In this document: positions 13,681 through 17,663 of the stretch, piece after piece
How positions within the stretch are numbered: position 1 is the stretch's first letter
Layout of the letters: each line of letters opens with the position of its first letter
Assembly: GCA_002269645.1 (NCBI GenBank)
Contig: NIVC01003099.1
Coordinates: 55,487-119,486, forward strand
Direction: 5' to 3'
DNA length: 64,000 nt
Source: Macrostomum lignano
Taxonomy: Eukaryota
The notes under the pieces: model-generated
Seen by the model: only the letters and a program-made list of their open reading frames with translations
Databases searched by the model: none
What the model was told of the DNA's origin: nothing
Program-made: the position numbers and the translations under genes

Positions 13681-14897
13681 CCTTGAGCAAGCCATATTGT
13701 TATTGTAACGTTTCAATTGACCCAAGGGCTAGATAAAGTGAGGCTTTATAGCCATTACAAGCTATGGGGGGTGCTCCAAAAGTCCTTTCCCTTTTGAACA
13801 TAGCTCTTGCAATACTGCTCCAATTTGAATGCGGTTTTTGACTATAAAAAGATGCACTTTAGCTCAAAAGTTTTGTAATTTGATCATTTTTTCTATCTAT
13901 TATGGACTTATGGTACTTTTAGGTCTAGTTCTTACCAAAATCAAAGGGCATTGCACAATAATATTTGCACTGATTATTACATTAGACATAATTCAAACTT
14001 GAGTATTTTTTAATTTTAATACTCGAGGTTAGCATTGATGTGTAGATAGTTCTGTATTAGCAAGGCACTCTTTCAATCATTATATAGCTTTGCTCTGCTA
14101 GCATAAAGCCACTAAGGCATATAGAATACTAGGTAAATGCCATCTTCCAAGTTGCTGTCTGGTGCTTGCATGAAAGGATTGCATTAAGAGGTTTACAATA
14201 TTAGTTTGTCTCAGCTTATGGTTTAAAATTGTCACAAAGTAATAATAATATGTCACAATTGCATAGCATAGCAGTGCTCTGTGCACAGAGTTGAAGAGCT
14301 AAAAAGCCTTTAGTAGTACTATCTGAATTCTGAATTCATAGCATTGCTTTCTTTGACCATTTTTGCCTTGCACTTGTGCTAAGGTCTCTATAAAATAGCA
14401 CCATTTCATCCAGTATCATTATTGTTCTCTTGTCATTGTTCATTGTTCATATGCTCTGGTTAATTTAAGTCTAGTTCATACAGGTGCAACACCTAGTCAA
14501 TTCAATTAAGTGGCCAAGGCAGGTACACTGCAAAGCTAATCAATCAAACACCAGGAAAAAAGCATGACATATTCAATAATTTTATTATTTAACTTGCTTA
14601 GGTTCATGCCTAGGTTCTGGTTTTTAATTCTTCAGTCAAATAAACTGGATCAGTTGTGGGAAGTATGGTCTGATTGTCTTTGTGTTAGATTGTAATGAAA
14701 GTCCATGTAACCAGACTGCAAAATGTCATAATAAGAGAACTGAGATGGAGAGGCTACCACATCAACTGAAAACATGCAACAAATATACAAAAAATTGCTC
14801 ACTTAAAAACACAAAAAGACACAAGGAGACTCAAAGAGACTATAAGATGGGTTAGAAGAGTAACAATAATGGGTTACCATGCAAAAAATGATTTCAG

Positions 14898-17663
14898 TCT
14901 GCTGCTAATAGTCTGTTCAGCCGCTCGCCTGAAGTTTGCGTACGCGACGCACTTCGAGGCTTAGTTATTGCCGATCCGAGTTTGGCATTGATTGCCAGAA
15001 CTGGCAGCTCTAGTAGTGAAGGCGTCGGCGGGGTGGTTATTCGTAGAGAGCCTCGCGGCTCGCCTACAGGCAATTGGGTTCGCGTGATAAGCGGCGGCGG
15101 TGCCGGGCATGAGCCTGCCTACGTCAGATTTGTCGGAGAAGGACTTCTCGACGCCGCTGTGTCGGGTCACGTGTTTGCGTCGCCAGCTCCTAACGACATC
15201 TTGGAAGCGATTCGCCAACTGGCTTGTCCCTCTGGTCTGCTAGTATTGATTATGAACTACACAGGCGATAGATTGAACTTTGGTCTAGCCGCTGCCAGGG
15301 CTCGAACTAGCGACCTTCGCTGTCGAATGTTTGTCTGTGACGATGATGCGTCGATTAAGGATCCGGCGCCGGCTGTTGGCCGACGTGGCATCGCTGGCAG
15401 CCTGCTGATGATGAAGCTGGCTTGCGGCCTGGCAGATTCTGGGCTGGATTTAGACTGCATAGTGGATCGGTTGGAAAGTTTAAGGACCCGACTTGCTACT
15501 GTGGGTACCTGCAGGCTGCCGACAGGCGACTGGGAGCTCGGGCTGGGGATTCACGGTGAAGCTGGTGTCGGTCTGTTGAAAAGTCATCAAAGCTCTATGG
15601 AAGCCGTGGTTGGAGCCGTTGTTAAGAAACTACTGGCAGATGAACGCATTGAGAAATCTATGAATAAAGTTAAAAAACAAGAAAGCTCTTCGTCTGCCGC
15701 TTGTGCCATGCTAATCAATGGATTAGGCGGATTATCGAATTTGGAATTATCTGGAATAGCGTCTGTAGCTTTTGAGACAGTGACCGCCGTTTCTAACCTA
15801 CCTGTGCGTCGTTTGTACATCGGCAATTTGATGACGTCATTGTCTGCTCCGGGATTTTCCGTTAGTCTACTGTTGCTGCTAGGCCAAGATGATGAAGGCT
15901 GGATTCTGGAAACATTGGACTTGCCGGCGCGAAGGTAGGGGGTTGGAATCTAGTTCTTTTAGGTCAATATTACTATCTGTGGCATGAAAATCCTCCCTGT
16001 GAAAACGGTACCGTGACAAGAGTCGCTAGAGCATACATGCGAAACCTTGGGAATCACTCGGCCGTTTCTATTGGCAACACACACATTTAAGTCGCTATTG
16101 GCTGAGAGCAGTCACGTGACTACTATTCCGTCCAATAGCGACTTACATGTGTGTGTTGCCAATAGAAACGACTGGGTGAATCCCTAGGTTGCGCCCAAGC
16201 ATGCGCTAGAGTCATTCTAAAGAACTCACTAATGACTTGAACGACTGTATTGCGTAAAATAGTCGCGAAAAATTCGTCTAAGAGACGTTGCGTTAAGCGC
16301 TTAACTTTCTACTCATTCAAGTAGACTAAATAGAGTTGTTAATTTAAATGCGAAATGCGATTCTAATTCATAAAGTGACGCAGATGCGTTCTAATTACGA
16401 CTCTTCGCCCCAGAGTCGCAGACAATAAAACGCCTCAAATGGACTCTTCGGCGGCTCTTTGAAGCCTTTTTGTCGACTTGTACTACTGGGACATCTTGTC
16501 GTTTAAGTGTTACCTGCAACGAATCTGAAACGACTCTGGGGCGACGAAAGTCACTCTGGTTCTCGGTACCGTTTTCATCGGGCGTTTTTTGTTGCTATGG
16601 AGATTCTAATCAGCTGACTGGATTTGAAATCCCAATCTAGTTGCTATGGGAATCCTGATCAGCTGACTGGATTGAAAATCCCAATCTAGTTTCTATGGAG
16701 ATCCTAATCAGCTGACTGGATTTAAAATCCCAATCTAGTTGCTATGGAAATCCTGATCAGCTGACTGGATGAAAATCCCAGTTTAGTTGCTATATTAGTT
16801 GCAATGCAAATTGCAAACCCATTCGAATTTTACTCAGGTGGCCAGCCGCTTCCTCGCCAAGCGTTCTGCGGCCCGATCAACTCGAACTAGCCGCCCTTCC
16901 ATCTGACCCAACCTCTGCATCGTCTGACAGCAGCATTCCCTGGCAATCAGCCGAGTCTCTGAGCTCAGCCCTAGCATCACTGAGCGCCGTGGCCGCAGCT
17001 CTCATCGATGCCAGATCGATTCTGAATCAGCTGGATTCTGTTGGCGGACTTGGAGACGGAGACTGCGGCGATACCATGTACAGGGGAGCGGTTGCTATGC
17101 AGAAGTTTGTTGAGCAGCCTAGCAACGCCATAGTAACGGTTAGTAGCGGGCCTAGGCGGTTGCTAGCTGAGTTATCCAGCCTGGCCCAGAGCGACATGGG
17201 CGGCAGTTCCGGAGCTCTGTTCGGCATCGGCCTGGCAGCTGCAGCCGCTTCGGTCTGTCAGTCACCATTTGATGCACGCAGCGCCATTGCCGCCCTGTCC
17301 GCTGCGGCTGGCGCCATCTCGGAGGCTGGTCGAGCTCGGCAAGGCGATCGGACAATGCTGGACACTGTGTACGGTTTCTTAGAAGCATTCGATGCCGGCC
17401 TATCAGCTGATGAGGTTTGGCAGAGGCTGCCAAGAGCGGTCAGGCGGGCTCGTGATGGGGCTGTTGCCACGGCTCAGATGAAGCCTCGAGCTGGTCGAGC
17501 TGCCTACGTTGGCGCTGAGCTGTCCTCAACCTCTGAATCCGAAGCTCGGCCAGACCCTGGAGCATGGGCCGCTCTGATTATTTTGCGAACTGTTTGCCGA
17601 GCTGTTGGAGTCGCTGTTGATGACACGGAAGCTGAAGATGCCGCGGTGCTTGGTTCCGGTTAA
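14898..17663 (+). CDS. TKFC: Triokinase/FMN cyclase (dihydroxyacetone kinase, fused DAK1-DAK2); exons 14898-15934 and 16838-17663; start codon not in these exons
   Basis: DAK1 motifs SGGGAGHEP, NYTGDRLNFG, GRRGIAG, ELGLGIHGE. DAK2 motifs GDGDCG, MGGSSGALFG, GDRTMLD, RAGRAAY, PDPGA. Phase-2 intron AG|GTAGGG ... TACTCAG|G joins LDLPARR-WP. AATAAA near 17735. Confidence 0.93.
15995..16582. mobile_element. Non-autonomous DNA transposon/MITE in the TKFC intron
   Basis: 22-bp TIRs CCCTGTGAAAACGGTACCGTGA (15995) and TCTCGGTACCGTTTTCATCGGG (ends 16582), with two internal inverted-repeat pairs. Confidence 0.75.
16594..16792. repeat. 49-bp tandem repeat, 4 copies
   Basis: Unit GCTATGGAGATTCTAATCAGCTGACTGGATTTGAAATCCCAATCTAGTT starting at 16594, 16643, 16692 and 16741. 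Confidence 0.9.

What the first reader, a model, noticed from the sequence alone, without database searches (positions are those of the whole stretch)
14889..14990. TKFC has no start codon of its own and may receive it from a trans-spliced leader
Seen: the frame extends upstream of the ORF call to a strong acceptor ATTTCAG (14891-14897), with an in-frame TGA at 14889 just before it. The exon begins in phase 0 with SAANSLFSRSPEVCVRDALRGLVIADPSL, which aligns with the extreme N-terminus of animal TKFC, yet has no ATG. Established: flatworm spliced leaders end in AUG, which can act as the initiator. Inference: SL trans-splicing at 14898 would give M-SAANSLF... exactly in frame, making translation of this enzyme dependent on trans-splicing.
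Basis: partly seen in the sequence, partly recalled or inferred. Interest (0 to 1): 0.72.

Follow-up and report, generated by a model that had tools for sequence, protein, structure and literature searches.

The report
Flatworm enzyme gene borrows its start codon
This Macrostomum flatworm gene for the sugar-metabolism enzyme TKFC has no start codon of its own and almost certainly gets its AUG from the spliced leader added to the mRNA, a mechanism already known in flatworms.

Summary
An in-frame TGA (14889-14891) overlaps an ATTTCAG acceptor (14891-14897). From 14898 the frame reads SAANSLFSRSPEV… with no ATG until codon 119.

The gene is a two-exon triokinase/FMN cyclase gene (Dak1 and Dak2 domains, 620 codons). 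It comes from Macrostomum lignano or a near-identical strain: it differs from UniProt A0A1I8J344 by about 6 clear substitutions outside two indel zones.

The published M. lignano spliced leader is 35 nt, ends in ATG and is followed by a GTAAG donor. Its published trans-acceptor motif is [T/C]TNCAG, which TTTCAG fits. Joining the leader to 14898 gives a 621-codon ORF that starts at the leader's AUG. The N-terminus then has the modal length of 120 homologs.

GC content jumps from about 35% to about 55% at 14898. No upstream ATG-exon with a consensus donor exists in the 2.1 kb upstream. The public M. lignano protein model also lacks Met and starts at the same serine.

No RNA reads could be reached, so the splice junction itself is inferred. 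Initiation at the leader's AUG is established in flatworms (Cheng et al. 2006), so this is a new instance of a known kind. Confidence is about 0.8 and interest is low to moderate.

The parts
12800..14897 (+). AT-rich upstream region, presumed to hold the promoter and the outron removed by trans-splicing. Its 5' limit is unknown.
   Evidence: GC is 26-42% in 100-nt windows, against 52-62% in the exon. The last 500 nt hold 13 ATGs whose ORFs are all 43 aa or shorter. No phase-0 ATG…|GT[AG]AG exon is present.
14889..14891 (+). In-frame TGA that closes the TKFC frame immediately upstream of the acceptor.
14891..14897 (+). 3' splice acceptor ATTTCAG, the proposed spliced-leader trans-splice site, with the junction after 14897.
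   Evidence: It fits the M. lignano trans-acceptor motif [T/C]TNCAG (PMC8629364). It coincides with the GC step and with the first residue of public model P0001.
14898..15934 (+). TKFC exon 1 (Dak1/DhaK domain). It starts in phase 0 with Ser and has no initiator ATG. The first in-frame ATG is at 15252.
15935..16837 (+). Intron 1 (GTAGG…CTCAG). It contains a 49-nt tandem repeat at 16591-16793.
   Evidence: sequence. The junction …LPARR|WPAASS… is identical in P0001.
16838..17663 (+). TKFC exon 2 (linker and Dak2/DhaL domain), ending with TAA at 17661-17663.
17735..17740 (+). AATAAA polyadenylation signal of TKFC.
18401..18451 (+). Identical ATTTCAG acceptor (18401-18407) and own ATG (18449) of the next + strand gene, an FHA-domain protein. 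It may be the downstream gene of a two-gene operon with TKFC.
   Evidence: The operon criterion is from PMC8629364.

Best explanation
The window carries an intact two-exon triokinase/FMN cyclase (TKFC, dihydroxyacetone kinase) gene of Macrostomum lignano or a near-identical strain. Its genomic coding sequence has no initiator codon.

The primary transcript starts somewhere in the AT-rich 2 kb upstream. The spliceosome joins the 35-nt spliced leader (…TTATTGCATG) to the acceptor TTTCAG at 14897/14898. This discards an outron full of short upstream ORFs. The leader's 3'-terminal AUG then sits directly in front of codon TCT (Ser) and becomes the only start codon that can produce a full-length enzyme: M-SAANSLFSR…, 621 codons.

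Transcripts that are not trans-spliced cannot make the enzyme.

Shown here: the sequence anatomy, the frame, protein completeness, the species and the leader sequence from the literature. Inferred: that the leader is actually joined at 14898 and that ribosomes start at its AUG.
For: 1. Anatomy. An in-frame TGA overlaps the ATTTCAG acceptor, and the ORF is open from 14898. The first in-frame ATG is codon 119, after the GGGAGHEP motif and inside the Dak1 domain, which spans residues 47-327.

2. Species. The window protein differs from M. lignano A0A1I8J344 (P0001) by about 6 clear substitutions outside two indel zones.

3. Leader. The M. lignano leader CGGTCTCTTACTGCGAAGACTCAATTTATTGCATG ends in ATG and is followed by a GTAAG donor. 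Between 30 and 39% of the species' genes are trans-spliced, with enrichment in conserved genes, and the trans-acceptor motif is [T/C]TNCAG (PMC8629364; PMC5730564). PMC10468722 calls the terminal ATG a translation start codon.

4. Frame. In silico, leader plus exon gives a first AUG at nt 33-35 and a 621-aa ORF. The next AUG is out of frame and opens a 44-aa ORF.

5. Completeness. With one added Met, the N-terminal length equals the mode of 120 homologs: 70 of 120 are identical in length and 114 of 120 are within 7-12 residues. 1UN9 aligns from its residue 11 to query residue 13.

6. Exon edge. GC steps from about 35% to 52-62% exactly at 14898.

7. No cis alternative. None of the 22 formal phase-0 ATG…|GT candidates in the 2.1 kb upstream has the consensus donor GT[AG]AG. 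The only such candidate within 5.9 kb lies inside transposon debris.

8. Public model. P0001 comes from a different copy or allele. It also lacks Met and begins at exactly the residue after the acceptor. This is what a transcript-based model gives when the transcript evidence ends at a trans-splice site (pipeline described).

9. Precedent. The flatworm leader AUG is an established initiator (Cheng et al. 2006, via PMC9851317, PMC12582326, PMC5832876).
Against: No RNA-level evidence could be obtained. P0001 is not on record for a contig look-up. An N-terminus-only protein search found nothing. No held paper or supplement lists this gene.

The acceptor hexamer is common by chance, and the sequence upstream of it is A-rich rather than pyrimidine-rich.

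I could not establish which annotation pipeline produced P0001, so its missing Met is only indirect evidence.

A very short upstream cis exon ending in ATG with a weak donor cannot be excluded. Four ATG|GT sites exist, at 12896, 13910, 14218 and 14665.
Confidence: 0.8

Rival explanations
1. A cis-spliced upstream micro-exon (a 5'UTR exon ending in ATG, or ATG plus a few codons) supplies the start codon and uses 14897 as an ordinary cis acceptor.
For: There are 22 formal phase-0 ATG…|GT combinations in 12800-14877, including four bare ATG|GT sites. Parasitic flatworms often share acceptors between cis- and trans-splicing (PMC12582326).
Against: None of the 22 candidates has the species' consensus donor GT[G/A]AG. 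The one GT[AG]AG in the 2.1 kb upstream, at 13738, is not preceded by an in-frame ATG ORF. No GC-rich, exon-like island exists upstream. The N-terminus already has full length. Public model P0001 has no such exon and no Met.
Confidence: 0.1
2. The gene has its own ATG at 14888 (aaaaaATGATTTCAG). A one-base homopolymer error in the TTT run (14892-14894) of the assembly puts it out of frame. The true protein would start MIQSAAN…
For: ATG 14888 lies 10 nt before 14898. One fewer T would put it in frame with no intervening stop (read). Long-read assemblies make homopolymer errors.
Against: P0001 comes from a different copy or allele (about 6 clear substitutions). It also starts at Ser with no Met, which would not be expected if an in-frame ATG lay 9 nt upstream. 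MIQ- would make the N-terminus longer than in 115 of 120 homologs. As it stands, the sequence is a perfect trans-acceptor motif.
Confidence: 0.03
3. Translation starts without an AUG from the leader. It would begin either at a near-cognate codon (CTG codon 6 at 14913, TTG codon 29 at 14982) or at the internal ATG codon 119, giving a truncated protein.
For: Near-cognate codons exist near the 5' end, and CTG 14913 has A at -3.
Against: On a trans-spliced mRNA the leader AUG comes first and is in frame. On an unspliced mRNA 13 upstream ATGs precede these codons. A start at Met119 deletes the GGGAGHEP motif and about a quarter of the Dak1 domain.
Confidence: 0.04
4. This is a non-functional gene copy (pseudogene) that has lost its 5' exon or start codon.
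For: M. lignano carries many duplicated genes (PMC8629364). Transposon debris lies upstream.
Against: The ORF of 620 codons is uninterrupted across a correctly spliced intron. The Dak1 and Dak2 motifs are intact: GGGAGHEP, NYTGDRLNFG, GIHGE, GDGDCG, GGSSGA, DRTMLD and PDPGA. A polyadenylation signal is present. The second known copy has the same Met-less start.
Confidence: 0.03

Closest known systems
Schistosoma mansoni mRNAs that use the spliced leader's 3'-terminal AUG as initiator methionine (Cheng, Cohen, Ndegwa & Davis 2006, J Biol Chem 281:733; called 'slORFs' in PMC9851317)
   Same: The flatworm leader ends in AUG and is joined to an acceptor at the very start of the coding region. The AUG is in frame, the recipient exon has no AUG of its own, and there is an in-frame stop in the outron.
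   Different: The species is different: a free-living macrostomid, whose own 35-nt leader has a different sequence. The gene is different too (TKFC). Here the junction is inferred from genome sequence rather than from cDNA, and translation was not tested.
SL trans-spliced genes of Macrostomum lignano (Wudarski et al. 2017, PMC5730564; Ustyantsev & Berezikov 2021, PMC8629364)
   Same: Same species and leader. The acceptor motif [T/C]TNCAG is the same. TKFC is a conserved gene, the class those authors report as enriched for trans-splicing. A gene follows within about 150 nt after subtracting repeats, as in their operon definition.
   Different: In the text I searched, those papers do not analyse use of the leader AUG as a start codon and do not mention TKFC. 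I could not consult their SL-read track for this locus.
Two-domain ATP-dependent dihydroxyacetone kinases / triokinase-FMN cyclase (Citrobacter freundii DHAK 1UN8/1UN9; animal TKFC)
   Same: The Dak1 + Dak2 architecture, conserved motifs and N-terminal length all match.
   Different: Identity to non-Macrostomum homologs is only 36-41%. The start codon is not encoded with the gene.

Membership tests
mRNAs initiated at the flatworm spliced-leader AUG (slORF) | The organism's spliced leader ends in AUG immediately before its GU donor. | tested here: met
   Species was assigned by near-identity to M. lignano TKFC. The leader sequence and its GTAAG donor are from PMC8629364 and PMC10468722.
mRNAs initiated at the flatworm spliced-leader AUG (slORF) | The leader is actually joined to this acceptor in mature mRNA. 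| not testable with these tools
   No RNA-seq or cDNA was accessible. Support is indirect only: the motif fits, GC steps at the site, and the public model starts at the same residue.
mRNAs initiated at the flatworm spliced-leader AUG (slORF) | The leader AUG is in frame with the main ORF, with no stop between them. | tested here: met
   Leader plus exon gives a 621-codon ORF from nt 33.
mRNAs initiated at the flatworm spliced-leader AUG (slORF) | The recipient exon has no usable AUG of its own, and the frame is closed upstream of the acceptor. | tested here: met
   TGA at 14889-14891. The first in-frame ATG is codon 119, inside the Dak1 domain.
mRNAs initiated at the flatworm spliced-leader AUG (slORF) | The protein N-terminus corresponds to initiation at the leader AUG. 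| not testable with these tools
   This needs N-terminal proteomics or ribosome profiling. Comparison with 120 homologs shows that only the Met is missing.
Triokinase/FMN cyclase (two-domain dihydroxyacetone kinase) | An N-terminal Dak1 (DhaK) domain and a C-terminal Dak2 (DhaL) domain in one chain. | tested here: met
   Pfam PF02733 E 3.6e-72 and PF02734 E 3.4e-35. PDB hits 1UN8/1UN9 and 26VK.
Triokinase/FMN cyclase (two-domain dihydroxyacetone kinase) | Conserved substrate- and nucleotide-site motifs (GGGxGHEP, NYTGD, GIHGE, GDGDCG, GGSSG, DRTMLD, PDPGA). | tested here: met
   All are present in the spliced translation. The motif list is from my own knowledge of the family. Enzyme activity was not tested.
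M. lignano operon (Ustyantsev & Berezikov criterion) | Adjacent same-strand genes less than 1 kb apart after subtracting repeats, with the downstream gene SL trans-spliced. | tested here: inconclusive
   The distance from the polyadenylation signal at 17735 to the acceptor at 18407 is about 650 nt, of which 501 nt is a minisatellite. Trans-splicing of the downstream gene is not testable here.

The most novel reading that the evidence does not exclude
TKFC mRNA is untranslatable unless it is trans-spliced. The worm could therefore use regulated trans-splicing, for example stem-cell (neoblast)-specific or nutrient-dependent, as an on/off switch for production of a central triose and flavin metabolism enzyme. 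The downstream FHA-domain gene might be co-regulated in one operon. This would be a regulatory use of the leader AUG rather than a passive one.
Probability: 0.08. Interest if true: 0.45.

Novelty: new member of a known kind. Interest (0 to 1): 0.22.

Why it matters
The main value is for annotation. Pipelines that trim the leader together with its ATG, or that align cDNAs to the genome, yield Met-less 'partial' proteins such as UniProt A0A1I8J344 for genes that are in fact complete. Ab initio predictors would wrongly start such genes at an internal Met, here codon 119, which removes part of the catalytic domain.

The locus is also a clean test case in a flatworm that can be made transgenic. It could show whether the Macrostomum leader AUG works as an initiator, as shown for Schistosoma. 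The papers I searched assume this for Macrostomum but do not demonstrate it. It adds no new mechanism.

Tried and rejected
1. Rfam scan of the whole window found no RNA family and no SL RNA gene. The 3' 16 nt of the leader with up to 2 mismatches is absent from the window.

2. Contig look-up for P0001 returned 'not on record'.

3. A protein search with only the 62 N-terminal residues, meant to catch short transcript-derived fragments, found nothing and did not even recover P0001. This looks like an index limitation and is not evidence.

4. A control search with the first exon of the neighbouring FHA gene found nothing. I therefore could not check whether the same public proteome gives Met-initiated models for neighbours.

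5. Supplements of PMC5816591 and PMC5730564 do not list TKFC/DAK. No held paper links Macrostomum and TKFC. Wasik et al. 2015 and Cheng et al. 2006 are not held.

6. I considered a second SL-AUG candidate at the HMG-box gene exon (TTGCAG at 31615-31620, minus strand). I rejected it because a GC-rich upstream exon with a GTGAGG donor lies 99 nt upstream, so it is an ordinary cis intron.

7. I considered TKFC as a downstream operon gene. I rejected this because the nearest upstream sequence with coding-like composition (10100-12800) is decayed transposon sequence on the other strand.
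Full report
**Observation.** The sequence reads …aaaaaATGAtttcag|TCTGCTGCTAATAGTCTGTTC….
- TGA occupies 14889-14891 and is in frame with the ORF that follows.
- ATTTCAG occupies 14891-14897.
- Translation from 14898 gives SAANSLFSRSPEVCVRDALRGLVIADPSL….
- The frame has no ATG until codon 119 at 15252.

The coordinates and content of the finding are therefore correct.

**What the gene is.**
- Pfam finds Dak1 in 14898-15934 (E 3.6e-72) and Dak2 in the ORF ending at 17663 (E 3.4e-35).
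- The two parts are joined by one intron: GT at 15935 and AG at 16836-16837.
- The junction …LPARR|WPAASS… is reproduced exactly in the best database hit, UniProt A0A1I8J344, 'Triokinase/FMN cyclase, Macrostomum lignano' (P0001).
- The spliced CDS is 1863 nt, or 620 codons plus TAA. It carries the family motifs GGGAGHEP, NYTGDRLNFG, GIHGE, GDGDCG, GGSSGA, DRTMLD and PDPGA.
- An AATAAA follows at 17735.
- The closest solved structures are dihydroxyacetone kinases (26VK, 1UN8/1UN9).

**Whose genome.** Outside two indel zones that look like model or assembly artefacts in P0001, the window protein differs from P0001 by about 6 clear substitutions over roughly 575 residues. All other hits are 41% identical or less. 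The window is therefore M. lignano or a near-identical strain, and P0001 represents another copy or allele. This fits the reported partial genome duplication of that species (PMC8629364).

**Is anything but the Met missing?** I aligned the first 110 residues with the 120 best homologs.
- 117 of the 120 start with Met.
- With one added Met, the window protein has 11 residues before a conserved Pro column. Of the homologs, 70 have exactly 11 and 114 have 7-12.
- Citrobacter 1UN9 aligns its residue 11 with query residue 13.

No coding exon is missing. Only the initiator is.

**Where the Met can come from.**
- The published M. lignano leader is CGGTCTCTTACTGCGAAGACTCAATTTATTGCATG (35 nt). In the SL RNA gene it is followed by a GTAAG donor.
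- Between 30 and 39% of the species' genes are trans-spliced, with enrichment in conserved genes. The top motif at trans-acceptors is [T/C]TNCAG, placed right at the junction (PMC8629364; PMC5730564).
- TTTCAG at 14892-14897 fits that motif.
- Joining the leader to 14898 in silico makes the leader AUG (nt 33-35, G at -3) the first AUG of the mRNA. It opens a 621-codon ORF. The next AUG (15109) is out of frame and opens a 44-aa ORF.
- The last 500 nt before the acceptor contain 13 ATGs, all opening ORFs of 43 aa or fewer. An unspliced transcript would therefore be untranslatable for TKFC.
- Use of the flatworm leader AUG as initiator is established for Schistosoma mansoni. [quoted passage not shown] 2006, as summarised in PMC9851317; also PMC12582326, and PMC5832876).

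**Independent sequence support.**
- GC content is 26-42% throughout 12800-14897 and jumps to 52-62% at 14898. This marks a true exon edge with no exon-like island upstream.
- The YTNCAG motif by itself is uninformative: 323 matches against 326 expected. On the + strand only three copies lie in the 2.1 kb upstream, and the last one ends exactly at the homology and GC boundary.
- A scan for upstream cis exons that could donate an in-frame ATG found 22 formal ATG…|GT combinations in 12800-14877. None has the species' donor consensus GT[G/A]AG. The single consensus case within 5.9 kb (10593-10613) lies in transposon debris on the opposite strand.
- P0001 also has no Met and starts with SAANNLF…, the residue right after the acceptor. 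An ab initio predictor would have chosen an ATG. A model that starts there implies that transcript evidence ends at the acceptor, as expected when a leader is trimmed or fails to align (pipeline in PMC5730564). I could not verify which pipeline produced P0001, so I treat this as indirect support.

**What could not be done.** No RNA-level data were reachable. No held paper or supplement mentions this gene. The trans-splice junction and initiation at the leader AUG therefore remain inferences, though well constrained ones.

**Rivals.**
- A cis-spliced micro-exon ending in ATG with a weak donor: about 0.10.
- A homopolymer error in the TTT run that hides an own ATG at 14888: about 0.03. The second copy argues against it.
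- Near-cognate initiation or initiation at Met119: about 0.04.
- A pseudogene: about 0.03. The intact 620-codon ORF argues against it.

**Context.**
- No + strand host gene lies within about 5 kb upstream, so TKFC is not a downstream operon gene.
- Downstream, the next + strand gene encodes an FHA-domain protein with its own ATG at 18449. It sits behind an identical ATTTCAG acceptor at 18401-18407.
- The gap from the TKFC polyadenylation signal is about 650 nt, of which 501 nt is a 34-nt minisatellite. After subtracting repeats the gap is about 150 nt. This meets the published operon criterion, so TKFC may be the first gene of a two-gene operon.
- In that downstream gene the leader AUG would be out of frame and would open a 66-aa overlapping upstream ORF.

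**Verdict.** The mechanism is textbook for flatworms, so this is a new member of a known kind. Its practical relevance is for gene annotation, and it offers a convenient reporter test in a transgenic-capable flatworm. Interest is 0.22.

Noticed in passing
window 17735-18451 (+): The next gene (FHA-domain protein, ATG 18449) sits behind an ATTTCAG acceptor identical to that of TKFC. After subtracting a 501-nt minisatellite (17867-18367, 34-nt unit x 14.8), the intergenic gap is about 150 nt, which suggests a two-gene operon. A leader AUG joined at 18408 would be out of frame and would open a 66-aa overlapping upstream ORF.
   Followed up: partly
P0001 (UniProt A0A1I8J344) versus window 15220-15260 and 15620-15700: The public M. 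lignano TKFC model lacks 13 residues, including the NYTG part of the NYTGD motif. It also has a 16-residue gap plus 8 scrambled residues relative to the window protein. These look like gene-model or assembly artefacts in the public entry rather than biology.
   Followed up: partly
window 10100-12800 (-): This is decayed transposable-element sequence. It has a weak reverse-transcriptase match (RVT_1, E 5e-5, below Pfam's cut-off). By eye it also has a mariner-like DDE stretch (…HQDNAPAH…) interrupted by stops, with no Pfam hit.
   Followed up: partly
window 30814-31850 (-): An HMG-box (Sox-like) gene. The exon that starts after TTGCAG (31615-31620) looked like a second start-less exon. It is preceded by a GC-rich exon with a GTGAGG donor 99 nt upstream, so it is ordinary cis-splicing.
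   Followed up: yes
window 56252-56773 (-): A single-ORF gene for a small-chain adaptor or coatomer-zeta-like protein (Clat_adaptor_s, E 3.5e-22). It has its own ATG and no acceptor directly upstream.
   Followed up: partly
window 19048-22518, 24077-24500, 38059-38932, 40783-41340, 46609-48400, 50921-51650, 53150-53830, 54369-55260: The window has a very high density of 20-50-nt minisatellite arrays. Several lie inside the introns of the FHA-domain gene, and they create long spurious ORFs in all frames.
   Followed up: no
window 779-2368 (+): Three adjacent or overlapping ORFs of 159-207 aa have no Pfam match. They may be remnants of an unclassified mobile element.
   Followed up: partly
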